Below are positions 14,731 to 59,076 of a stretch of DNA of 64,000 nt, one piece after another. The notes under the pieces were generated by a model. That model saw only the letters and a list, made by a program, of their open reading frames with translations. It was not told the DNA's origin and did not search any database. Within the stretch, counting starts at the first letter, position 1; each line of letters starts with the position of its first letter. The position numbers were made by a program, and so were the translations under genes. Source of the DNA: Podarcis erhardii. Its lineage: Eukaryota. The stretch lies in the NCBI GenBank assembly GCA_964252035.1, contig OZ176203.1. One strand, 5' to 3'.

Positions 14731-14803
14731 TGCATGGCATGACTGTGGCCCTAGACAGTAGAACATTTGCTGCCTTATCAGCCTAGAAATGGGATTACTT
14801 TTT

Positions 14804-17800
14804 TATATATATATAAATATTTATTAAAGTTTTTTGAATACAAATGCATAGATAATAAACAACATTACTTATATCATAACATAATTTCGTCACTTCTTTG
14901 GACTCCCTCACGTCTCCCGCTCCCACTTACATCGTTAAAAAAAAAAATTCCAAGCAAATTACCATCTTGTTTACAATCTTATATCCGCTCATTTAAGTAA
15001 AATCTAGCAGTTCTCCAAAAGATTTATATTTTCCTTAGTCTCACTTATCGTCAAATTCAGATCTAATTCAGTGGTGGACAATTATTTGTGATCTAGCATC
15101 CTTCTTAACATTCAGCCAAATTACAATATTTTTGTAAATAAATCTTAAATTTTTTCCAATCTTCTTCAACCCTCTCTTCTCCCAGGTCTCGGATTCTGCC
15201 AGTCATCTCGGCCAGTTGCATATAGTCCATCAGCTGCATCTGCCACTCTACCAGTGTGGGTAGATCTTGAGTTTTCCAACTCTTAGCGATGAGTATCCTT
15301 GCTGCCGTTGTTGCATACATAAAAAATGTTCGGTCCTTCTTTAACACCTTCTGGCCGACAATACCCAGAAGGAAGGCCTCTGGTTTCTTAGTGAAGGTAT
15401 ACTTAAATACCTTTTTCAACTCATTATATATCATTTCCCAGAAGGCCTTCACTTTAGGGCAGGTCCACCAGAGGTGAAAGAATGTTCCTTCATATTCTTT
15501 ACATTTCCAACATTTATTATCAGACAAATGGTATATTTTGGCAAGTTTAACTGGGGTCATGTACCATCTATATATCATTTTCATTACATTTTCCTTCAGA
15601 GCATTACATGCAGTGAAGTTCAACCCAGTGGTCCACAACCTTTCCCAGTCCTCAAACATAATGTTATGCCCAATGTCCTGAGCCCACTTTATCATAACCG
15701 ATTTAACCATTTCGTCTTGTGTATTCCATTTTAACAGCAGGTTATACATTCTTGATAATACCTTAGTCTTTGGTTCTAACAATTCTGTTTCCAACTTCGA
15801 TTTCTCCACCTGGAACCCTAACTTTTTATCATTTTTGAAGACTTCTTTAATCTGAGCGTAATGTAACCAGTCTCGCACTTTATCCTTCATTTTCTCCAAA
15901 CTCTGCAATTTCCAATTGTCTCCATCTTTTTCTAATATTTCCCAATATTTTGGCCATTTGGCCTCCATATTGGGTCTTTTTCGGGCCTTAGCTTCCAGAG
16001 GTGAAAGCCACCTCGGAGTTTTGTTTTCCAATAAGTCTTTGTATTTTGTCCAGACATTAAATACTGCTTTCCTGACAATATGGTTCTTAAAGGCCTTATT
16101 GATCTTAACCTTATCATACCATAAGTATGCATGCCAACCAAAAGCATTGTTGAAACCTTCCAGGTCCAGTACATCAGTGTCTTTGAGAAGTAGCCAGTCT
16201 TTTAGCCAGCAGAAAACTGCGGCTTCATAGTACAGCTTTAAGTCTGGCAGGGCAAAGCCCCCTCTTTCTTTCGCATCAGTTAGTATCATAAACTTAATTC
16301 TGGGCTTTTTGCCCTGCCAGACAAATTTAGATATATCTCTCTGCCACTTCCGGAAGCACTCCGTCTTGTCCACAATCTGCAGTGTTTGAAACAAAAACAA
16401 CACCTTTGGCAATACATTCATCTTAATAGCAGCAATTCGGCCTAACAAAGAAAGCTTCAATTTTGTCCAACTATCCAAGTCTCTCTTAATTTCAGACCAA
16501 CATTTTTCATAGTTATCCTTAAATAGACTCAGATTTTTCGCTGTTATATTTACCCCTAGGTACTTTACTTTTTTAACCACAGTTAGTTCTGTTTCTCTCT
16601 GAAACCGTTCTGACTCTGTATCTGTCAGATTTTTTCCCAACACCTTAGTTTTCTGTTTATTTAGTTTAAATCCCGCCACCCGACCAAAATCTTGAATCAA
16701 TTGTAATACTCTTTTTGTACTAGATTCTGGCTCCTGCAGGGTCAGAACTAGGTCATCTGCAAAAGCTTTAAGTTTGTATTGTTTCGCTCCGACCTGAATC
16801 CCTTCCACCAACCGGTCCCCTCTAATCATATTCAAGAGCACCTCCAGAACCGATATAAATAGCAAAGGGGAAATTGGGCAGCCTTGTCGTGTTCCTTTCT
16901 CAATTTTAAACTCTTCTGTAACCACATTGTTAACTATCAATTTAGCCTTTTGTTCTGAATATATTGCATCAATCCCATTCTCAAAACCCCGACCCACTCC
17001 CATTTCTTTTAAATTTCCCTTCATAAATTTCCAAGAGATATTATCAAAGGCCTTCTCCGCATCTATGAAGATTAGCACTGCTTTTGTATTTATGTCTGTT
17101 TGCAAAAGTTCCAAGATGTCAATAATGTTCCTTGTATTAGCAAACATGTGTCTACCTGGGAGAAAGCCTGCCTGGTCTTTGTGAATTACTTCATTTAGAA
17201 CTTTTTTAAGTCTACTTGCCAGAACATCTGCAAATATTTTGTAATCCACATTTAAAAGGGAGATGGGACGGTAGTTCTTGAGTTGTGTCTTTTCAGACTC
17301 CGATTTAGATATCAATGTGATAAATGCTTCCTTCCACGATTCCGGAGCCCTCTTCCCCTCCATAATTTCATTGCTGACCTCCATCAGTGGTTGTATCAAG
17401 TAGTCTTTTAATATCTTATAATACTTGGAGGTTAGCCCATCTGGCCCTGGAGATTTGCCCAGTTGCATGTTCTGAATGGCTTTTTCAATCTCTTGGCGTG
17501 TTATTTTGCTGTTCAGGAGTAATCTATTTTCTTGTGACAATTTTTTAAGTCCATTTTTCTCCAAAAATTGTTTAATCTCAACCTCGTCCTGCGGCCCTTG
17601 AGTATATAATTTTTTGAAATATTTCTGAAAACACTTTCTGATCTCCGTGGGGTTCTGAATGTTTCTTCCTTCAATTTCCAGATTTGTAACTGTATTTAAT
17701 TTTTGTCTCTTCTTCAACTGCCAAGCTAGCAGTTTCCCACATTTATTTGCCGATTCAAAAGTTTTTTGTTTCATTAATTTAATCTTCCACTCTATTTCCT

Positions 17801-18421
17801 GATTTATCAGTTTGGAATATTGTGCTTGATGGAGTTTGATTTCTCTCAAGATCGGCTGTGACTTCGGATTTAATCTTAACTTCTTCTCTAATTCTTTTAT
17901 TTTCTCCAAAATCTTATCTTTTCTGTCGTTTTGTATCCTTTTCTTTACAGCATTCTGTTGTATCAAGAACCCCCTCATCACAGCTTTACTTGCATCCCAA
18001 ATAGTTCTTTTTTCCACCGTAGTGTTCATATTTATCTCAAAGTAGTCCTTCAAAGCTTTCTGGGCCTTCTTAATAATCTCCTGATCTCTAAACAAGTTGT
18101 CATTCATCTTCCATCTAAAGGAGCCGGTTGGTAATAGTATCATGTCCATTTTCAGTGCGTTATGGTCGGAGCAGGTCTTTGGGCAGATTTCCACCTTTCT
18201 GACCTTGGGTGCCAGACCTCTAGTTATCCATATTTGGTCGATTCTTGTCCAAGTCAGCTGGGCTTCAGAGAAAAATGTTCCTTCTTTTCCCAAGGGGTTC
18301 TTCGTTCTCCAGATGTCAATCCAGTCCATATTGTCTGTCAGTTCAAAAAAGGTCTTTGGTAGTCTGCCGTCTTTTGTGACATTTTGGCTTTGTGACTTAT
18401 CCATGTTAGTTGATACGACCC
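14804..18421 (-). mobile_element. 5'-truncated young L1-clade LINE
   Basis: Perfect 17-bp TSD aaatgggattacttttt at 14787-14803 and 18422-18438. TT/AAAA target site on the minus strand. The 3' UTR has AATAAA and a (TA)n/A tail. Confidence 0.97.
15105..18404 (-). CDS. L1 ORF2 (APE endonuclease C-terminal half, reverse transcriptase, C-terminal CCHC zinc knuckle); N-terminus removed by 5' truncation
   Basis: 1099 aa with no stops. Motifs: TRIDQIW and CSDHNAL (EN); KSPGPDG, YRPISLLNVDYKI, GTRQGCPISP and AFADDL (RT); CWKCKEYEGTFFHLWWTC. The Met at 18404 is internal: the frame continues VVSTN up to the truncation point. Confidence 0.95.
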   Translation of the reverse strand: MDKSQSQNVTKDGRLPKTFFELTDNMDWIDIWRTKNPLGKEGTFFSEAQLTWTRIDQIWITRGLAPKVRKVEICPKTCSDHNALKMDMILLPTGSFRWKMNDNLFRDQEIIKKAQKALKDYFEINMNTTVEKRTIWDASKAVMRGFLIQQNAVKKRIQNDRKDKILEKIKELEKKLRLNPKSQPILREIKLHQAQYSKLINQEIEWKIKLMKQKTFESANKCGKLLAWQLKKRQKLNTVTNLEIEGRNIQNPTEIRKCFQKYFKKLYTQGPQDEVEIKQFLEKNGLKKLSQENRLLLNSKITRQEIEKAIQNMQLGKSPGPDGLTSKYYKILKDYLIQPLMEVSNEIMEGKRAPESWKEAFITLISKSESEKTQLKNYRPISLLNVDYKIFADVLASRLKKVLNEVIHKDQAGFLPGRHMFANTRNIIDILELLQTDINTKAVLIFIDAEKAFDNISWKFMKGNLKEMGVGRGFENGIDAIYSEQKAKLIVNNVVTEEFKIEKGTRQGCPISPLLFISVLEVLLNMIRGDRLVEGIQVGAKQYKLKAFADDLVLTLQEPESSTKRVLQLIQDFGRVAGFKLNKQKTKVLGKNLTDTESERFQRETELTVVKKVKYLGVNITAKNLSLFKDNYEKCWSEIKRDLDSWTKLKLSLLGRIAAIKMNVLPKVLFLFQTLQIVDKTECFRKWQRDISKFVWQGKKPRIKFMILTDAKERGGFALPDLKLYYEAAVFCWLKDWLLLKDTDVLDLEGFNNAFGWHAYLWYDKVKINKAFKNHIVRKAVFNVWTKYKDLLENKTPRWLSPLEAKARKRPNMEAKWPKYWEILEKDGDNWKLQSLEKMKDKVRDWLHYAQIKEVFKNDKKLGFQVEKSKLETELLEPKTKVLSRMYNLLLKWNTQDEMVKSVMIKWAQDIGHNIMFEDWERLWTTGLNFTACNALKENVMKMIYRWYMTPVKLAKIYHLSDNKCWKCKEYEGTFFHLWWTCPKVKAFWEMIYNELKKVFKYTFTKKPEAFLLGIVGQKVLKKDRTFFMYATTAARILIAKSWKTQDLPTLVEWQMQLMDYMQLAEMTGRIRDLGEERVEEDWKKFKIYLQKYCNLAEC

Positions 18422-18975
18422 AAATGGGATTACTTTTTAACTGGTTTGTGGACTGTGCACATCTTGACCCACTGTAAGATGTCAGCGTTTCACTTTTGAC
18501 ATGTCAGGAATGTACAAAGCCAGGAAGTGCAAGGCACTTGCACTTCTTGTTCCCTCTGCTTTGCTGTGATGTTGAGAGTCATACCAAGAAAGCAGAGTGG
18601 AAAAAGAGAGCTCCCTCATTTCCAAGTCTAGGCAATATTCTGTAATAGAAACATTAAATGTCAGGCCTTTTTTTTTTCTTCGCCTCTAGGCTTTTCGCCT
18701 TCCTGGAGAAGTGGCATAGATAAATAAAATCTCTGTCCTTTGGGAATAATGCAGCTACAGTGACATCTATGGCTAGGTAACTAGGCTTCATCTTTCTCTT
18801 AAATATACTCGTAGTGGGAAGCAAACTGTGGCCTCCTGGAGAGCTCCTGTGCCTGTGGGAGAGAGCCAGAAGGGCAAGGAAACAAAATTAATCTCTTGGT
18901 GTTTCGCTCTAATCTTCTCTCCAGAGAGCAACAATTTAAAGGCTGTGGAGAAAATCAGGGTGTAGCTGTTCATAA

Positions 18976-23970: not shown

Positions 23971-24733
23971 CAACTGTCACTCTGAATTAGCATCCAGTGA
24001 CATTTCTTGCTGCAGTCACGGAAGAGCCAAATATGTCCATCCAAGGTTTTTCCTCCAGAGGAGCATAGCCAAAATTAGATGTATGTGTGTCTAAGTTTGC
24101 CTGAGTTTCATATACAGTCCTCTAATCTCACTTCTGATTGCATTCTGAGTGCAGTTTGGGGGGGAAATGAATGTGGAATCCCAAAAATAATGTTGCAATT
24201 CCTTTTTATTTAAAAAAAAAATAATATTTATCACTTTTAAACCTTAAAATAAAGAAGAAAAAGAAAGGAAAAAAAGAAGAAGCAAAATAAAGGAAAAAAA
24301 TACGATACAATATATAAACAGTACACAACGCAACATTAACACATTAGATTAAACAAAACAAAGCAAAAACAATTTAAAAACATACATCATACCATTTCAA
24401 TGCCTTATCTTTCATTCCCTTGTTTCATCGACCTCCTCTCATCTCCCTTTTTGTATTCTACTTCTATTAATTGTTTCAGCAATTCCTTTCCATCTTTCTA
24501 TATTTTCTGTCATATAATTATCTTAATTTATTTGAACCTTATTTTCCATTAATACTATAATATTTATGCTTAACTCCTTATAACATTTCTACTAAAGCCT
24601 TATAATTTCATTCCAACATTTTTCTGACACTCATTAATTTTACAGTATTTCTATAAATAAACTTTAAACTTTTTCCAATCTTCTTCCACCGTCTCTTCTC
24701 CCTGGTCTTGGATTCTGCCAGTCATTTCCGTCA

Positions 24734-25168
24734 TGTCAGGGAACTGACATCAGAGTCAGAGGTGGAGGCAAGGCTCCCAAGCGATGCTGGAGAGGGGGCC
24801 AGCAAGGAGAGAGGGAGCTCATCGGCTGGGGAAGGGAATCAGCGCAACACCAGTAGAGAAGGGGGGCAGATGGGGGATTCGGAGAGGGGTCTCCAAGACT
24901 CTTCGCCCGAAAACAGTGGGGAGAGCACAGGCACTCCTCTGCCCACTCCCTCCCTGCGCAGAAGACTTCCGCGCAGGGAGAGTAGGAGGAGACTGGGTGT
25001 CAAACAACTTCTTTGCTGGAAGAGTTTCAAAAAACGCCCACTGACGGATTCTGCTAGCGACTGAACAGCCACGGAGTGAAGGGCTGTCAGCCAGGACAGG
25101 TTAAACCAGGCAACCTGGCCCAGGAGTGGCGGTAACTTATGCACGAGCAACCCCTTATAACCATTACA
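24734..25168 (+). mobile_element. Solo-LTR-like element (TG..CA, 435 bp) inserted in the ORF2 stub of the half-L1
   Basis: tgtcaggg...ccattaca with 5-bp TSD cgtca at 24729-24733 and 25169-25173. Removing it restores the frame MNYMELT-EMTGRIQD. Strand is assigned only from the ORF and a ttataa motif. Confidence 0.85.
24735..25064 (+). CDS. Open frame within the LTR-like element: Ser/Glu/Gly-rich segment then an Arg-rich motif (no in-element ATG at its start)
   Basis: VRELTSESEV...TPLPTPSLRRRLPRRESRRRLGVKQLLCWKSFKKRPLTDSASD*. Open from base 2 of the element for 109 codons plus stop. Confidence 0.4.
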   Translation, partial: VRELTSESEVEARLPSDAGEGASKERGSSSAGEGNQRNTSREGGQMGDSERGLQDSSPENSGESTGTPLPTPSLRRRLPRRESRRRLGVKQLLCWKSFKKRPLTDSASD

Positions 25169-25188
25169 CGTCAATTCCATATAGTTCA

Positions 25189-25914
25189 TCAACCTGGTGA
25201 TCTTCTGTCCGAGGCTCTTAACTCTTTTCCAAGTCCCTTCTGCAGGTCTTCTTCATATTTATACATGCACTTTACTTTGTCTTCTGCTGATCTTGTTCTT
25301 AATTTCCTTCCTTTGATGCTGAAGAGTAGATCTCAGGGAAGCTCCGACCTAGCAATGTTTTTATTCCTTCTTGACAGGTTAGCCAAATCTCCGTAATTAA
25401 AACTAAAATCCAAAAGATATTTCAGGACGTGTTTCAAAATCCCTCCAAATCTGAAAGTCCCCACAACTCCAATCTCCTCCTGACCCAGGTCCAGGTCCCA
25501 AAGGTCAGTAAATCCCTGCATGAGGTGATCTATCCAACTTTCCTTCTCCAGTCCAAGCAGGGCTCCAATCCTCAAAATCTGACCTTCTCTGAATTCAATC
25601 ATAGAAGGCAACAACTTATAGTCATCAAATTGCCTCTGTAAGGCTGGGGCTCTCTCCCTCTCCACCCGTATTACTTTAGGTTCAACAACAACAACTTTCT
25701 CCCTCGCCTTCTCCACAGCCTGCCACGCCAAAGTAGATTCCTGCATCGATTCCTGAACGGCTTCTGTATAGATGTTCACTCTTTGTCCCAAATTAGTCAC
25801 TTTTTGTCCCAAGTTATCAATTTTAATAGTCATCAAATCCGTCTTCTTGTGGAGCTGTTCCAATGAATCACTTATCTTACATAATGCAATCACTAAGGCT
25901 TCTTCTGTCGACAT
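25189..25914 (-). pseudogene. L1 ORF1-like gene (coiled coil, reduced RRM, CTD) with one premature TGA at 25333-25335
   Basis: ATG at 25914. Heptad pattern LEQLHKKTDLMTIKIDNLGQKVTNLGQRV, then LRIGALLG. In-frame continuation past the TGA (DLLFSIKGRKLRTRSAEDK...YEEDL) resembles an ORF1 CTD. Final stop at 25189-25191. Confidence 0.7.
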
Positions 25915-26399
25915 TCTTAACCTATCCAAGGTCAATCCCTGGTTCTCACGGTTTTTTATCTTGCAGCTGGAGATTCAACCAGCTCAACTCTTGTAACAGT
26001 TTCAAAGGCTCCCTCTAGAGGGAAACAATTTCTATTTGCATCAATCCTTTTAAGCACAGTTCAAGCAATAAAATTAGTTTCAATTTTCAGTTACTTTTAC
26101 TCCTTTTTAAACGCAGAAGGAGATAATGGAAACAATGTATTTCTCTTATTTAACTAGCTGTCAAGATACGTTTTATTCACAGTCAATGAACTTTCCCAAA
26201 ACGTCAGTCTTACTAGCAGCCCATTTCCAGGTTCAGAGCGGTGGTAATTTAACTTTCTTCACTCTCTCCTGCAGGCTTACGTGATCCCAAATTTCCCCCC
26301 CTCTTCTCCTGCTTCCAAGGGGGGTTTAATGATTTTAGCCGATGGAAGTTTAATCCTTTACAGAGGACTTTCCAAGACTTTAGCTTGCAAGCTCTTTGC

Positions 26400-26829
26400 T
26401 TCAATCTATTTACAAAAGGGGGAGGCAGACTTCCGGTTTGAAACCTCCCCGTTTCGATGCCAAATTAAGACGTTTAAAAATCCAGTTTTCCGTTCTACTC
26501 ACGGGTAGTTATTTAGCATCAAATTGTCCACAGGAAAAAGTCAGCGCTCTCCGGCAACAGCAGTGCAGCTTCACTCCGTGAAAGAAGCAGTCAATTTGAA
26601 GCACCGCGCTGCTCACCCCACGTCGCTCCGGATCCCCGAAACCGGGTCTCCCCACGAGTAGGGGAGACGCAAAAGGTGCCAGCCGAATCCCATGTTCACA
26701 GGCTTCTCCCGCCTATGATTTTTAGTGGGTCTCCGCCTTCGCCGTGGCGGCCAGACCCTGATTTCCATGGAGCAAATTCCTCCCGATCAGAGGAATTCTG
26801 CCATTGTCGGAGGCGCCAACCCGGAAGTC
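26400..26829 (-). promoter_or_regulatory. CpG-rich L1 5' UTR / putative internal Pol II promoter
   Basis: Dense unmutated CpGs, ETS-type CCGGAAGT at 26821-26828 and two 8-bp hairpins. Confidence 0.65.
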
Positions 26830-26869
26830 AATAGTGTTGCAATTCTTGAACAATTTCATTTTTTACAGT

Positions 26870-27000
26870 AGTAGAGCACAAGCTTTGCACGCAGGTCTGA
26901 AGTCTGTACTCCGGGCATCCTCCCATTCAAATGATCTCCAGTAGCTGGTGACAGGTGTCTGAGATCCTGAAGAGCCACTGCTAGTCAGAATCCACAACCA
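26870..27000 (+). mobile_element. Degenerate tRNA-derived SINE remnant
   Basis: gtagagcacaagctttgcacgcagg...ctgagatcctgaagagccactgctagtcag resembles the copies at 4853 and 20030. Confidence 0.4.
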
Positions 27001-28588: not shown

Positions 28589-28726
28589 TTTCATAGAATT
28601 GTAGAGTTAGAAAAAGCCACGAGGGTCCTTTAGTCCAACCCCCTACATTGCAAGACTCTTTTGTCCAATGTGAGGCTCGAACCTCCTGCCCTGAGATTAA
28701 GAGGCACATGCTTCACTGACTGTACT
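28589..28726 (-). mobile_element. tRNA(Lys-like)/CR1-tail SINE
   Basis: Same family as 27710 and 41337. B-box ggttcgagcc. Confidence 0.7.
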
Positions 28727-28733
28727 AAAATTT

Positions 28734-29375
28734 GCCCATCATTACTCTGGCAAATAGAAGGGGAAGAAATGGAGGCAGTGAGAGATTTTACTTTCTTGGG
28801 CTCCATGATCACTGCAGATGGTGACAGCAGCCACGAAATTAAAAGATGTCTGCTTCTTGGGAGAAAAGCAATGACAAACCTAGACAGCATCTTAAAAAGC
28901 AGAGACATCACCTTGCCAACAAAGGTCTGTATAGTAAAAGCTATGGTTTTCCCAGTAGTGACGTATGGCAGTGAGAGCTGGACCATAATGAAGGCTGATC
29001 GCCAAAGAATTGATGCTTTTGAATTATGGTGCTGGAGGAGACTCTTGAGAGTCCAATGGACTGCAAGAAGATCAAACCTATCCATTCTTAAGGAAATCAG
29101 CCCTGAGTGCTCACTGGAAGGACAGATCGTGAAGCTGAGGCTCCAATAATATTTTGGCCACCTCATGAAAAGAGATGACTCCCTGGAAAAGACCCTGATG
29201 CTGGGAAAGATGGAGGGCACAAGGAGAAGGGGACAACAGAGGATGAGATGGTTGGATAGGTTCTCGAAGCTACCAGCATGAGTTTGACCGAACTGCGGGA
29301 GGCAGTGGAAGACAGGAGTGCCTGGCGTGCTCTGGTCCAAAGTCGGACACGACTAAACAACTAAACAACAACAAC
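28734..29375 (+). mobile_element. BovB (RTE clade) LINE, 3' fragment
   Basis: WQIEGEEMEAVRDFTFLGSMITADGDSSHEIKRCLLLGRKAMTNLDSILKSRDITLPTKV...FELWCWRRLLRV, ending agtcggacacgactaaac(aac)n. Confidence 0.93.
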
Positions 29376-41470: not shown

Positions 41471-42738
41471 GCACAATAGCATTCTACCCACCTAGTGGTT
41501 TCTAGCAACTTGAAAGCAGATTACCTAGTTCTGCTTTTTCCACTCATACTGCTCATGGCAAGGGAGTAAATCCTGCACATGCAGCATTTGACAATTTTCC
41601 TACTCTGCTGCTGCTAACCTAGGGGCAATTCCTACTTGCTCTTAGCAAAGTGACAAATTACAAAGTTGATTTAAGCAATCTAATTGAAACTGTTCTGCTA
41701 ATTAGTAATTGTTTGGGGGCACATGGGTGACAACTGGCTACAGGCTGTGTAGCCAAAGTCTACCTGTATTGTCATTCCTTCAGTGTATTTCTAAAACAAC
41801 TCTCATATTCAAGTACATCATGAATGCTGAGACTGGGATTATTCCATAATGGGCTTTCCACTTAAGCAATCCAGTTTTGCCTTTGTATGAGACACAGTGG
41901 CTGAATTTCAAAACTTGCCAATTGTTTAAGCGAACATTATCCTGCCACCTGCATTATTCATTGTATGTTACCCTGCTGCTGTGAATTCTGAGTTAACACG
42001 GCAAAGTTATCTTCCCCAGAAGGAGAGTTCTCCACTACAGCCAATTTGCAGCTATATTATATCAAATGTTAATGTTTAACTTGCTCCCATTATTTCATTA
42101 ACAGCCCCCATCGATAAATTATTTAAATTCCTTGTGGTCAGTAACAGGGTTTTTTGGAGCTGTTACAATTCCTTTGCATGAGGGGGATGTATTTTTGCAT
42201 TTTTAAGGGGAGGAGAGAGAGAGAAAAGAGAGAGAAAGAGACCAATGTGTCAAAATAAAATAAATAATGGAAGCCCAGATTTACCACATTCCCCATCCAT
42301 TTGCCTGTCTTGAATCTCCCATGTACTAATGTGCAGTCGGAGAAGGCCACTCCACTTCCTTGTGGAGAGGTGTTGCGGGCAGGTCACGTAAAGTGGGGCA
42401 TCTAAAATTTCAGTGAATCCTGATACTAAAAAGGGCCCATATGTTGAACATTTTCTGAGTCCCTTCTACCAGTGGGGCATGAGGGGTAGGGTGGAGCACT
42501 GACGCCATCAATCATCACTGAGCTCATTGCTGTGACACCCTGACTGATGAATGCAACATAGTCACCACAGGGAAGGGGGTTGCTATTGCTTCACCCGACC
42601 CCTGCACTGCTGCTCTTCTCTTTCTATAGCATGCATCCACTAGCATAAAAATAATGAGAGGAAACTGATGTGAATAGTCCTGTACACAGCTAGAATAAAT
42701 GTTCTGTAAACCACTGAAGATGTTTTATTTGCAGTTAA

Positions 42739-43291
42739 NNNNNNNNNNNNNNNNNNNNNNNNNNNNNNNNNNNNNNNNNNNNNNNNNNNNNNNNNNNNNN
42801 NNNNNNNNNNNNNNNNNNNNNNNNNNNNNNNNNNNNNNNNNNNNNNNNNNNNNNNNNNNNNNNNNNNNNNNNNNNNNNNNNNNNNNNNNNNNNNNNNNNN
42901 NNNNNNNNNNNNNNNNNNNNNNNNNNNNNNNNNNNNNNNNNNNNNNNNNNNNNNNNNNNNNNNNNNNNNNNNNNNNNNNNNNNNNNNNNNNNNNNNNNNN
43001 NNNNNNNNNNNNNNNNNNNNNNNNNNNNNNNNNNNNNNNNNNNNNNNNNNNNNNNNNNNNNNNNNNNNNNNNNNNNNNNNNNNNNNNNNNNNNNNNNNNN
43101 NNNNNNNNNNNNNNNNNNNNNNNNNNNNNNNNNNNNNNNNNNNNNNNNNNNNNNNNNNNNNNNNNNNNNNNNNNNNNNNNNNNNNNNNNNNNNNNNNNNN
43201 NNNNNNNNNNNNNNNNNNNNNNNNNNNNNNNNNNNNNNNNNNNNNNNNNNNNNNNNNNNNNNNNNNNNNNNNNNNNNNNNNNNNNNNNNNN
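42739..43291. other. Assembly gap (553 N)
   Basis: Run of N. Confidence 1.
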
Positions 43292-46189
43292 TTTCCATCA
43301 CCTTTGCAAGTAATCTGCTGGCCCCAAGGTTTTAGAAGTGGGTGGCAGTGACAGAAGAGGCAGCAGAGAGGGACACACTGTCAGTACTCAAATCTTTTCC
43401 AAGCTGCCCTTTTCCCCACACTGGGCTCCTATAAGAGGATGGGTGGGATAGACATTAAAGACAGAAATATAGCCTGACAATTTGGGGGTGAAAAATGCCT
43501 TGGAATGCCCAAGTTCCCTGGGAAGAGAGATTGATCGCAAAACTACCCTGACAATTGTAGCTCTGGGAGAGGACTAGGGGTCTCAGACCCTTCACAAAGT
43601 CCCCAGAATTCTCTGAGAGAAGCCATGACTGCATAAAGTGGTATCATGGTACAGCTGGGGCCCTAGAGTGAACCCCATGGAGCATAGTGGGGTATACACT
43701 TCTGACCTTACTATGCGGTTGCAATCCTAACACAATTACTAGGGGGTAAGCCCCACTTCTGAATAGGATTGGTATGCACATAGGATACCCATGATGTACA
43801 AGTGGATCATGTATGAAAAGCAGTAGTGGTTGGTGAGGTGGTGCTGACCTTGCCACTACCTTGCATTTCCCTGTCCCAGTAAAGCAACAATGGTGATGGG
43901 AGGCCATGTAAACAATGCCACCCTATCAGCCACTACTGCTAGGATGAACTGAACATTTAATATAATGTAATTCCATTGCCCACTGCTGGAATCCTGCAAA
44001 GTGAAAGGGTACTGTCTGCTTGAAAATATAAGTGTAAAAGAGTTGTTGCTGTTTTAGGGAAATAACACACACACACGCACACACACACACACACACACAA
44101 GCATCATCTTCTTTGAGTTTTGAACTTGATGTAAATGGCTTGAAGCCAATTTTCTTAGCAGCACTGAATTCTGATGTCAATAAATGACTCTGTTTCAAGC
44201 AGTTATTTTCTGGTAATTAGCAATTTAAGGTCAGGCAGCCCTGCCAAAAATGGGCAATTTCTTTAATGGGCATGGGGAAATGGTTGACCCCCAATGCACC
44301 TTTAAATCAAAGGAATATTTTTTTGGCATCATGGGAAGATTCCTTTTTGATATCAGTGCTGGGAAGCTCCACTGAGCTGGCTTGCCCCATTTTAAGCTTA
44401 AGGAGAGGATTTGAGCTGGTTGCAAATCTAGTGCTTTGAACTCTGCAAGCTCAAAATGACTGCGTAACAAATAAAAATGCTGGGAGCTCTTGAAGCTTAT
44501 TGTTCTAAAAATAACAGCAAGATCAGGATTGTTAAAGAAATTGGATCATTAGAGCTTTCTTTGACTTTCTTGTCACCTTCAGGTAGATCCAAACATCTAC
44601 AAATTTGTATGAAATATGATATTGCTATTGGGATTTACCCAGCAGCAGAGTGCAGCACAGGACAATGTGCCAAGTGATTAATTTCATCTGTGATTCTAAA
44701 TCCCCCAGCAAGATGTCAATTACAGATATAGTGAATATTATTTAGTATTTAAGCATAAGCAGATATTGTGCCCTTCCAAGTTTTTTGGGGTTTTTTATGT
44801 TGGGTCACTCAACCCAGCACTCCACAAATCTGGACCTTTTGACTTAGCAGGATAATTCCTAACAATTAATTCCAGAACCAGAACATACAGACATTGCTTC
44901 AGCCTTCAGTTCCTTAAGTTCATTTGCATCTTCCCCTCCTCTGGCTTACTAAGGAGCATGGACACACTGATAAAATGCTGCCCCCCCAAAAAACAATTTT
45001 GATGTGAGCCATGTGGTGAGGCCTTGGGAACCTAATGATACCAGCAGGCCAGCAGTTCCCCACTGCTGCTATGTTGTTATTGTTGTTGTTGTTGTTGTTG
45101 TTGTTGTCACCATCACCATCACATTATATTTCTTATCCACTCTTCCCCATAAGTTGCAGAAGACGTGCATCTGGAAATTTCATTTAATATTTTTTCAGAG
45201 AATGCTGAAGATGTACCTCTTTACTCTGGCCTTTGACACATGAGATGTATATTTTAAGGCTCCGCCCTATTTTTCTGATTGAATTCTTCGTAAAAATAAA
45301 AATTCAAAAAATAATGTGTTTTACAATATAAGCAACCCTGGAACCTTAGGGTGGTGATAAACCATAATAATACAGTGTCCAAAAGTCTTCCCAAATACCC
45401 GAGAAATAGCTACACTGAACTTGCACTGTAGGTAATTTAAAAGGTGGAGACATTTGAAAACATCCCTACTTAATAATATAGCAATGTGCAAGTTTGCACA
45501 CTAAAGGGGAGGTTATAGGACTATGAGCAAATCTAAATTTCCAGAAAGCAATTGAATCCTTCCCACAAAATACTGGTAGTCCAAATGTGACCTTCCTGTA
45601 GAATGAACATAGCTACATGATGATTCCTTTTCAAGTTTTGGAAGGGGCCTTAATTTTTTTTATTACTCTACCACCACCCTCTCTTTATCATTCTAAGCTT
45701 TCTTTATTTTTTGGCTTTGGGGTGTGTGTTTCTTTAAAAATACATCCTGGGTTTCGTAAGTATTCCCTATGAGTACTTACAACCCAAAGGTTGCTTGAGT
45801 TCTGGGAAGGCATGGTCATCAAAACCAAAGTGGTTGCAAGTTCAGTGTGGGGTTATTTGCCCATTGCCAATATTGACATAAAATCAGTGATCCAAATAAA
45901 CTCTGTGTACCCGAGACTGTGGAGAATCACAGCGGACAGATCCTCCTTTATTTCCATTTGTTTTGCTGCAGGAGTTCCAGCAGCTGTGAAGGCAACTTCT
46001 CTTTAATCTGAAAAATGGCTTCCCAGTTTGGCTGCGGTAGCTGCTGCCAATAAATTTTTGAAGAAAGCTCCAGTTACTCCCAGGCTGTTGTCTCTTTTGG
46101 ATTGTAGCCAGTGTTTAGAAATAGTACTCTCAGGGAGCTCTTGGCCTTTCTTCTTCATTATTAAATTTTAATCCTGTCCTTCATCAAAT

Positions 46190-58013: not shown

Positions 58014-58746
58014 TTTATTTATATCCCGCCCTCCCCAGCCGAAGCCGGGCTCAGGGCGGCTAACAACACTAAAACAGTACAGCATTATAAAACAGTATAA
58101 AAATGGATTAAAATGAATTAAAATCAAAATTGATGGCAACCATAAACTAAAGTTTTGTAAAGATTGCCAGAGGAGGGAGTCAGGCTGCGCCCTGACCAAA
58201 GGCCAGGTGGAACAGCTCTGTCTTGCAGGCCCTGCGGAAAGATGTCAAGTCCTGCAGGGCCCTTGTCTCTTGTGAGAGAGCGTTCCACCAGGTTGGAGCC
58301 GCAGCCGAAAAAGCCCTGGCTCTAGTTGAGGCCAGCCTAACCTCTCTGTGGCTTGGGACCTTCAAGATGTTTTTATTTGAAGATCGTAAGTTCCTCTGTG
58401 GGGCATACCAGGAGAGGCGGTCCCGTAGGTACGAGGGCCCTAGGCCGTATAGGGCTTTGAAGGTTAAAACCAGCACCTTAAACCTGATCCTGTACTCCAC
58501 CGGGAGCCAGTGCAGCTGGTATAGCACCGGATGAATGTGATCTCTAAGCGAAGACCCCGTAAGGAGTCTCGCTGCAGCATTTTGCACCCGCTGGAGTTTC
58601 TGGGTCAGTCTCAAGGGCAGCCCCACGTAGAGCGAGTTACAATAATCCAGTCTGGAGGTGACCGTCGCGTGGATCACAGTGGCTAGGTCAGGGCGTGAGA
58701 GGTAAGGAGCCAACTGCTTAGCTTGGCGGAGATGAAAGAATGCGGA
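57983..58746 (-). mobile_element. 5'-truncated young L2-clade LINE with (TAT)n tail
   Basis: Open 3' part of the ORF, a 3' UTR and a microsatellite tail at 57983-58010. Confidence 0.9.
58180..58746 (-). CDS. L2 ORF2 C-terminal fragment (post-RT region), stop-free
   Basis: AFFHLRQ...TSRLDYCNSLYVGLP...LQRVQNAAARLL...HIHPVLYQLHWLPV..RIRFKVLVLTFKAL...RAFSAAAPTWWNAL...KTELF. Codons upstream of ~58746 are flanking DNA. Confidence 0.85.
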   Translation of the reverse strand, partial: SAFFHLRQAKQLAPYLSRPDLATVIHATVTSRLDYCNSLYVGLPLRLTQKLQRVQNAAARLLTGSSLRDHIHPVLYQLHWLPVEYRIRFKVLVLTFKALYGLGPSYLRDRLSWYAPQRNLRSSNKNILKVPSHREVRLASTRARAFSAAAPTWWNALSQETRALQDLTSFRRACKTELFHLAFGQGAA

Positions 58747-59076
58747 GATGGGGTGAGGGCATCCCCACACTATCCCCATCACAAAGAAAGGAGATGCAAA
58801 TCACGTTGCGTCTTGTTCTTTATCACAATGATAGCAGGGGGTTCTGCTGCTGGCTGTCGCTGCAGGGACAGTGACAAAAGCATATTGTTATTATTAAAAA
58901 CAATCTGTTTATTAGTAGGAGTGACAGCAGTAATACTTGTTGGAGCAGTGGTGCTTACTTGACCTCCCAACACCGCCATCACTGCAGGTGAGATGGGGTA
59001 AGATGGATCAGCATGGTGCAAAGCACTAGTGGAAGCAATATGACCGCATTGCTGCTACCAATGTATCTGTACTGTA

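What the first reader, a model, noticed from the sequence alone, without database searches (positions are those of the whole stretch)
24202..26829. Complete ORF1-only 'half-L1' retrotransposon in a squamate, sitting beside an autonomous-type L1 that shares its 3' end
Seen in sequence: one unit bounded by a 16-bp TSD contains an L1-type 5' terminus, a CpG-rich UTR, a 241-codon ORF1-like frame with one internal TGA, only the last ~45 codons of ORF2, and a 3' UTR with A-tail. Without the nested LTR it is ~2.2 kb. The ORF2 stub (MNYMELTEMTGRIQDQGEETVEEDWKKFKVYL) matches the end of the L1 ORF2 at 15105 (MDYMQLAEMTGRIRDLGEERVEEDWKKFKIYL). Established: ORF1-only HAL1 elements are described mainly from mammals and rely on L1 ORF2 in trans. 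Inference: the TSD encloses the whole unit, so it probably inserted in this form. That points to a mobile non-autonomous L1 family supplying its own, divergent ORF1, possibly not yet described in lizards.
Basis: partly seen in the sequence, partly recalled or inferred. Interest (0 to 1): 0.75.

Follow-up and report, generated by a model that had tools for sequence, protein, structure and literature searches.

The report
Dead lizard half-L1 copy, shrunken ORF1
This is a complete but broken 2.2-kb copy of a wall-lizard jumping gene that descends from LINE-1, has lost the copying enzyme and keeps only a shortened first gene. Other copies in related lizards share its odd structure, so it is a real family like the mammalian "half-L1" elements and not a one-off deletion.

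Summary
The described unit is real. It lies on the minus strand at 24204-26829, between a 16/18 target-site duplication (0 of 2000 shuffles reach that match). It has a 915-nt 5' UTR with a CpG-rich start and a 241-codon frame with one premature stop. About 141 nt of ORF2 tail follow, split by a 435-bp TG..CA insert with its own 5-bp duplication. A roughly 400-nt 3' UTR and an 8-9-nt A-rich tail end it.

The frame is a true L1 ORF1 derivative. It matches full-length lacertid ORF1 proteins (E down to 1e-20), and a model of one of these finds human LINE-1 ORF1p as its top 11 PDB matches. The frame lacks the basic N-terminus and 40 residues of the RNA-binding domain.

At least three other Podarcis-type proteins (P0029, P0004, P0006) share that deletion and group with it (support 100/98). 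Two of them end at the same ORF1/ORF2-tail junction. The junction is therefore a family trait.

- The neighbouring L1 is a 5'-truncated dead copy.
- It shares only the ORF2 tail, not the 3' UTR.

This scan had already noted the same kind of element at 10 or more other places in this genome. No paper in the searched library describes half-L1 elements in reptiles. DNA copy counts could not be obtained.

The parts
26830..26847 (-). 5' copy of the target-site duplication. On the element's strand it reads AAGAATTGCAACACTATT and is preceded by TTC.
   Evidence: 16/18 match to 24186-24203; 0/2000 shuffles and 0/2000 random real pairs reach it. The target TTC|AAGAA resembles the L1 endonuclease site TT|AAAA.
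25915..26829 (-). 5' UTR of 915 nt. The first ~400 nt are CpG-rich and are the presumed internal promoter.
   Evidence: CpG o/e 0.7-1.5 and GC 0.57-0.60 at 26430-26829, against 0.15-0.24 in the flanks. Promoter function is inferred. No remnant of the L1 ORF1 N-terminal basic region was found here.
25189..25914 (-). Mini-ORF1: 241 codons plus the final stop. There is a premature TGA at 25333-25335 (codon 194). The final TGA at 25189-25191 lies in ORF2-derived DNA.
   Evidence: Translation. phmmer hits to lacertid L1 ORF1 proteins, E 4.6e-30 to 7e-4. tblastn in one frame through the stop. A 40-column gap relative to full ORF1 removes RRM strand 3, helix 2 and strand 4.
25174..25192 (-). ORF2 tail, first part. 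The deletion junction ORF1|ORF2 is at about 25192/25191.
   Evidence: Nucleotide homology to the neighbouring L1's ORF2 end starts at 25191.
24734..25168 (.). Nested 435-bp TG..CA insert, probably a solo LTR. It has a 5-bp duplication CGTCA (24729-24733 and 25169-25173).
   Evidence: Read directly from the sequence. No other copy is in the window. The LTR identity rests on the termini and the duplication only.
24612..24733 (-). ORF2 tail, second part. It has an in-frame TAG at 24651-24653. Homology continues 8 codons to the position of the L1 ORF2 stop and a few nt beyond.
   Evidence: blastn 24640-24728 against 15121-15209 at 87.6%; tblastn of the neighbouring ORF2 residues 1061-1099; alignment.
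24212..24611 (-). 3' UTR, AT-rich, with a pyrimidine-rich stretch near its end. It is not similar to the neighbouring L1's 3' UTR.
   Evidence: Local alignment score 23 against shuffles 22.6 +/- 3.7 (computed on 24283-24626).
24204..24211 (-). Short A-rich tail (AAATAAAA).
   Evidence: Read directly from the sequence.
24186..24203 (-). 3' copy of the target-site duplication.
14787..18438 (-). Neighbouring 5'-truncated L1 (14804-18421) with a perfect 17-bp TSD and an open 1099-codon ORF2 remnant. It belongs to a recently active L1 lineage of the kind that could supply ORF2p in trans. It is not part of the half-L1.
   Evidence: RVT_1 E 3.6e-38; TSD AAATGGGATTACTTTTT at 14787-14803 and 18422-18438; target GTT|AAAAAG.

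Best explanation
The unit is one full-length but dead copy of a multi-copy, non-autonomous LINE-1 derivative of lacertid (wall) lizards, a 'half-L1'.

The family arose from a lacertid L1 by three losses:
- the stretch from the last ~30 codons of ORF1 to ~141 nt before the end of ORF2, which removes the endonuclease and reverse transcriptase;
- 40 codons inside the ORF1 RNA-recognition motif;
- the basic N-terminal ~50 residues of ORF1.

Proposed mechanism:
- Its RNA is presumably made from the CpG-rich 5' UTR.
- It is copied into new sites by ORF2 protein borrowed from complete L1 elements, through target-primed reverse transcription.
- The 16-18-bp target-site duplication, the TTC|AAGAA target and the short A-rich tail are the footprint of such an event.

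After insertion this copy acquired one premature stop in the mini-ORF1 and an LTR-like insertion in the ORF2 tail.

Shown: the anatomy, the L1 ORF1 ancestry, the shared derived structure in other copies, and the TPRT footprint. Inferred: promoter activity, trans-mobilisation by L1 ORF2p, and any function of the mini-ORF1 protein.
For: - Anatomy and TSD.
- No EN or RT: only RVT-free sequence lies between ORF1 and the ORF2 tail.
- ORF1 ancestry: 11 phmmer hits. The full-length 344-362-aa Podarcis-type proteins hit at E 2e-20 to 7e-4, and the named ones are all Podarcis. The AlphaFold model of full-length P0009 has a long helix, then a b-a-b-b-a-b unit, then a C-terminal domain. Its top 11 PDB matches are human LINE-1 ORF1p (2ykq, 2ykp, 2yko, 2ldy, 2w7a), E 2e-6 to 9e-5.
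- P0002 (P. raffonei) joins this ORF1 type to ORF2 sequence like the neighbouring L1's.
- Family status: P0004, P0006 and P0029 share the identical 40-column gap and the missing N-terminus. The three tested (this copy, P0004, P0006) form one side of a branch at 100/98 support, with gaps not counted.
- P0029 and P0006 end ..LRASD.R.PG-stop exactly as here. In this copy that stop codon is ORF2-derived DNA read out of frame.
- Coding constraint in the family: P0029 (48% identical to this copy) and P0006 (41%) are still open. In a substitution-only neutral simulation, 0.03% of sequences stay open at 48% identity and 0 of 3000 at 41%.
- An active L1 partner is plausible: the neighbouring truncated L1 has a perfect TSD and an open ORF2.
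- 31-mers of the 5' UTR-ORF1 part occur in runs of 6 or more coded organisms from 8 studies.
Against: - The shared junction is therefore shown only through protein ends, and copy number and distinct TSDs are not shown here.
- Proteins in databases are pre-selected for open frames, which weakens the constraint argument.
- The mini-ORF1 model is confident only for the coiled coil (pLDDT below 50 after residue ~85), so the protein may not fold into a working RNA binder.
- The tail is only 8-9 nt.
- The 3' UTR does not match the one L1 available for comparison, so the actual L1 partner is unknown.
- Neither the mini-ORF1 nor the full lacertid ORF1 proteins hit Pfam's L1 ORF1 models.
Confidence: 0.85

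Rival explanations
1. A one-off event: a normal full-length L1 inserted here and later lost its ORF2 by an internal deletion, which would leave the TSD untouched.
For: A TSD around the unit cannot exclude a later internal deletion.
Against: The ORF1 also lacks 40 RRM residues and the N-terminal region. Both features, and the ORF end at the junction, recur in P0029, P0004 and P0006 from other genomes or runs. The mini sequences form a supported group.
Confidence: 0.03
2. A family exists, but the ORF is a relic without function. The element would spread like a non-coding SINE-like L1 parasite, using only its 5' promoter and 3' end.
For: - Half of the RRM is gone.
- The model beyond the coiled coil has low confidence.
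- RRM-remnant motifs (LRI, PE.E) are lost in P0004, P0006 and P0029.
- An earlier scan note reports a non-coding L1-derived retroposon in the same genome (unchecked).
Against: Frames of 201 and 212 codons stay open at 41-48% identity to this copy, which is very unlikely under neutral change. The last 12 residues are 9/12 identical in three copies whose overall identity is 31-48%.
Confidence: 0.25
3. A processed retrocopy of a host gene that had captured ORF1 sequence, such as the P. muralis LOC144326050 / LOC114590114 family.
For: P0001 and its 10 relatives share the first 38 residues, including 7 codons upstream of this element's ATG.
Against: Those proteins diverge completely after residue 38. 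This unit continues through ORF1's C-terminal domain into an ORF2 tail and an L1-style 3' end. The direction is more likely the reverse: a half-L1 5' part became a first exon.
Confidence: 0.02

Closest known systems
Mammalian HAL1 ('half-L1') elements (Smit 1999; Bao & Jurka 2010, as cited in PMC5753468 and PMC5322556)
   Same: Derived from L1. Keeps the 5' region and ORF1, lacks the ORF2 enzyme, carries a TSD and an A-rich tail, depends on L1 in trans, and is a multi-copy family.
   Different: It arose independently from a lacertid L1 (tree). Its ORF1 is shrunken: no N-terminal basic region and half of the RRM missing. It keeps ~141 nt of ORF2 tail, and its tail is very short. Mammalian HAL1 is described as encoding ORF1p as such.
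LINE-1 ORF1p (human trimer structures 2ykp, 2ykq, 2yko; RRM 2w7a)
   Same: The full-length lacertid relatives have the same coiled coil + RRM + CTD fold. The mini-ORF1 aligns with them over the coiled coil, RRM strand 1 to strand 2, and the CTD.
   Different: 40 residues covering RRM strand 3, helix 2 and strand 4 are missing. There is no Pfam match, and a fold is not predicted beyond the coiled coil.
Ordinary internally deleted L1 copies, e.g. the P0002 gene model (P. raffonei LOC128406054)
   Same: ORF1 sequence joined directly to ORF2 sequence by a deletion.
   Different: P0002 has a different junction (inside the RRM, to mid-ORF2) and keeps the N-terminal region. It looks like a single accident. 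The present structure recurs in several copies.

Membership tests
HAL1-like (half-L1) non-autonomous L1 derivative | Encodes a protein homologous to L1 ORF1p | tested here: met
   phmmer E 2e-20 to 7e-4 to full-length lacertid ORF1 proteins. A model of one of them matches human L1 ORF1p first. tblastn aligns in a single frame.
HAL1-like (half-L1) non-autonomous L1 derivative | No endonuclease or reverse transcriptase | tested here: met
   Only ~141 nt homologous to the ORF2 end remain. tblastn with the neighbouring ORF2 hits only residues 1061-1099. No RVT or EN Pfam hit.
HAL1-like (half-L1) non-autonomous L1 derivative | L1-type insertion footprint (TSD, A-rich 3' end, TT|AAAA-like target) | tested here: met
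   TSD 16/18, 0/2000 controls reach it. Target TTC|AAGAA. The tail is only 8-9 nt.
HAL1-like (half-L1) non-autonomous L1 derivative | Many copies share the same deletion junction, each with its own TSD | tested here: inconclusive
   At protein level, P0029 and P0006 end at the same junction-defined stop, and P0004, P0006 and P0029 share the RRM gap. DNA copies and TSDs could not be read. Earlier scan notes report 10 or more such units in this genome (unchecked).
HAL1-like (half-L1) non-autonomous L1 derivative | Complete ORF1p domain set, as in mammalian HAL1 | tested here: not met
   The N-terminal ~50 residues and 40 RRM residues are missing.
Mammalian HAL1 lineages (descent) | Descent from a mammalian L1 lineage | tested here: not met
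   The nearest relatives are Podarcis L1 ORF1 proteins. The mini group is sister to P0002 of P. raffonei.
Pfam L1 ORF1 families (Transposase_22 and partners) | Match to the Pfam profile | tested here: not met
   No hit for the mini-ORF1 at E<=1. No hit either for full-length lacertid ORF1 at E<=10. The miss reflects the profile's reach, not a different fold.

The most novel reading that the evidence does not exclude
The shrunken ORF1 protein is a working protein kept by selection in an independently evolved lizard half-L1 lineage. It would keep the trimer-forming coiled coil, the CTD and a conserved ..LRASD.R.PG end, but only half an RRM. It would then either define a minimal ORF1p that still supports trans-mobilisation, or act on L1 itself, for instance by mixing into L1 ORF1p trimers.
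Probability: 0.3. Interest if true: 0.6.

Novelty: new variant of a known kind. Interest (0 to 1): 0.4.

Why it matters
Half-L1 elements are described only from mammals in the literature I could search. A separately evolved lizard counterpart shows that L1 repeatedly spawns parasites that keep ORF1 but not ORF2. Its ORF1 stayed open through deep divergence although half of the RNA-binding domain is gone. That makes it a natural experiment on which parts of ORF1p a trans-mobilised RNA needs. This particular copy is dead and ordinary within its family. The value lies in the family, which this scan has now met repeatedly in this genome.

Tried and rejected
No depth, joint or empty-site data were obtained. 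Those places were sent to no search tool afterwards, and I worked beside them (from 24283).
- The search of earlier findings by sequence was blank.
- A metagenome scan for a 34-nt ORF2-tail pattern gave 0 hits.
- Pfam on the mini-ORF1 gave only coiled-coil noise. Searches of PDB sequences gave no L1 ORF1p.
- Rfam found nothing in 24283-26900.
- blastn within the window found no second copy of the element or of the nested insert.
- A remnant of the L1 ORF1 N-terminus in the 5' UTR was not found.
- The paper of Bao & Jurka 2010 is not held.
- No complex prediction was run, because no binding claim rests on it.

Full report
**What is there**

The unit reads on the minus strand. In the order of that strand it consists of:
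- A target-site duplication copy at 26830-26847.
- A 915-nt 5' UTR (26829-25915).
- An ORF from ATG 25914.
- A junction with ORF2-derived DNA at about 25192/25191.
- About 141 nt of ORF2 tail (25192-25174, continuing at 24733-~24612).
- A roughly 400-nt AT-rich 3' UTR.
- An 8-9-nt A-rich tail (24204-24211).
- The second TSD copy at 24186-24203.

The two TSD copies agree at 16 of 18 positions. None of 2000 shuffles and none of 2000 random real pairs from the window reach that. The first ~400 nt of the 5' UTR have CpG o/e 0.7-1.5, against 0.15-0.24 in the flanks.

The ORF2 tail is split by a 435-bp insert with TG..CA ends and a 5-bp duplication CGTCA (24734-25168). This is most simply a solo LTR, though that rests on its ends alone. 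Without the insert the element is 2186 bp long. On the element's strand the target reads TTC|AAGAA, close to the L1 endonuclease site.

**The ORF**

From the ATG there are 241 codons with a single premature TGA at codon 194 (25333-25335) and no frameshift. Pfam gives nothing but coiled-coil noise.

A full phmmer search of 1.84 billion representatives gave 11 hits. The full-length hits are 344-362-aa proteins. Every hit that carries a name is from Podarcis (P. muralis, P. raffonei, P. lilfordi).

These full-length proteins also miss Pfam's L1 ORF1 models, even at E<=10. An AlphaFold model of one (P0009) shows a long helix, a b-a-b-b-a-b unit and a small C-terminal domain. Its 11 best PDB matches are all human LINE-1 ORF1p.

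P0002 of P. raffonei links this ORF1 type in one gene model to ORF2 sequence like that of the L1 in this window. The frame here is therefore a real L1 ORF1 derivative.

Against the full proteins it lacks two things:
- the basic N-terminal ~50 residues;
- a block of 40 residues that holds strand 3, helix 2 and strand 4 of the RRM.

It keeps the coiled coil, the first half of the RRM and the C-terminal domain. The model of the 200-residue piece is confident only for the coiled coil.

**The junction**

Nucleotide homology to the end of the neighbouring L1's ORF2 begins exactly at 25191 and runs ~141 nt across the nested insert. It passes an in-frame TAG (24651-24653), reaches the position of the L1 stop and continues a few nt beyond. 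The final stop of the mini-ORF1 (25189-25191) is thus ORF2-derived DNA read in another frame.

**One-off or family**

That does not exclude a later internal deletion. I could not read DNA of other copies:

The protein data answer the question instead.
- P0004 and P0006 (Logan contigs) and P0029 (P. lilfordi CAI5765718.1, on a 123-Mb chromosome) all lack the N-terminal region and carry the identical 40-column gap.
- In a tree where gaps are not counted, this copy, P0004 and P0006 form one side of a branch at 100/98 support. P0002's L1 ORF1 is the nearest outsider.
- P0029 and P0006 end ..LRASD.R.PG-stop exactly as here, that is, at the junction-defined stop.
- P0004 ends at the position of this copy's premature stop. 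P0006 and P0029 have a sense codon there.

The mini sequences fall into at least three sub-lineages that are 29-48% identical to each other: this copy; P0029 with P0004 (82% to each other); and P0006 with P0030 (57% to each other). Even so, P0029 and P0006 are still open.

In a substitution-only neutral simulation starting from this ORF, 0.03% of sequences stay open at 48% identity and 0 of 3000 at 41%. This argues that the frame was kept by selection while the lineages diverged. The caveat is that databases hold only open frames.

The last 12 residues are 9/12 identical in three copies whose overall identity is 31-48%.

31-mers of the 5' UTR-ORF1 part occur in runs of six or more coded organisms from eight studies. 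This fits either orthology or a shared family and does not decide between them.

**The neighbour**

The L1 at 14804-18421 has a perfect 17-bp TSD, a GTT|AAAAAG target and an open 1099-codon ORF2 remnant. It starts inside the endonuclease and has no ORF1. It is a young, dead-on-arrival copy and not an autonomous element.

It shares with the half-L1 only the ORF2 tail: 87.6% over 89 nt, 116/146 nt overall, and 26/39 residues. The 3' UTRs show no similarity. It does show that an L1 lineage was active recently and could lend ORF2p.

**How it most likely works**

The RNA would be transcribed from the CpG-rich 5' UTR and reverse-transcribed at a nicked TT|AAAA-like site by ORF2p of a complete L1. 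The TSD, target and tail are the shown footprint; the rest is inferred.

This copy then suffered one nonsense change and the nested insertion. One stop in 241 codons fits a few per cent of neutral change.

Whether the mini-ORF1 protein acts in cis, acts on L1, or is dispensable is open. I give about 0.25 to 'dispensable relic'.

**Known or new**

In the searchable library 18 papers mention half-L1, and none deals with reptiles. HAL1 is described there as mammalian and of repeated independent origin (PMC5753468). Repbase and Dfam could not be checked.

This scan had already noted the same kind of element at ten or more other places in this genome, with follow-ups calling it a wall-lizard half-L1 with mini-ORF1. 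Those are unchecked notes. My evidence was obtained independently and agrees with them.

I file it as a new variant of a known kind. It works like HAL1 but is not a member of the mammalian HAL1 lineages, and it fails the feature 'complete ORF1p'.

Noticed in passing
window 14787-18438 (minus): Young 5'-truncated L1 with a perfect 17-bp TSD, a GTT|AAAAAG target, an open 1099-codon ORF2 remnant and a (TA)n-plus-A tail. This is evidence that an L1 lineage was active recently in this genome.
   Followed up: yes
P0001 and P0019-P0028 (Podarcis muralis LOC144326050, LOC114590114, LOC144326096, all on one 14-Mb contig): A small tandem gene family. Its first 38 residues match the start of the mini-ORF1, including 7 codons that lie upstream of the ATG in this element. 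The rest is an unrelated acidic, serine-rich repeat. It looks like a half-L1 5' part taken over as first exon or promoter.
   Followed up: partly
P0007 (P. muralis XP_028576234.1, 'TRIM39-like'): A gene model with RING and B-box domains followed by the RRM and C-terminal domain of L1 ORF1p. It is either an annotation chimera or a TRIM-ORF1 fusion.
   Followed up: no
P0002 (P. raffonei XP_053229072.1): A gene model that joins the N-terminal half of L1 ORF1 in frame to the middle of L1 ORF2. It is another internally deleted L1, with a junction different from the half-L1 family's.
   Followed up: partly
P0003, P0009, P0012 (full-length lacertid L1 ORF1 proteins): They do not hit Pfam's L1 ORF1 models even at E<=10, although the predicted fold matches human ORF1p first. 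This is a gap in profile coverage that can hide lizard ORF1 genes from annotation.
   Followed up: yes
window 25192-25230 (minus) and the ends of P0006 and P0029: The last ~12 residues of the mini-ORF1 (..LRASD.R.PG) are far better conserved than the rest of the protein. An earlier scan note (s1-241316) reports the same for the last eight residues. It is undecided whether the constraint acts on the protein or on the RNA.
   Followed up: partly
window 24213-24244 and 14804-14830 (minus): The half-L1 and the neighbouring L1 both end in a similar short motif (.ATAAATATT.AT) just before the tail, although their 3' UTRs are otherwise unrelated.
   Followed up: no
window 28630-29340 and 58180-58782: Long ORFs on overlapping strands that look like remnants of other LINE families. 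There is no Pfam hit at E<=0.01.
   Followed up: partly
window ~42720-43300: A run of N (assembly gap or masked stretch).
   Followed up: no
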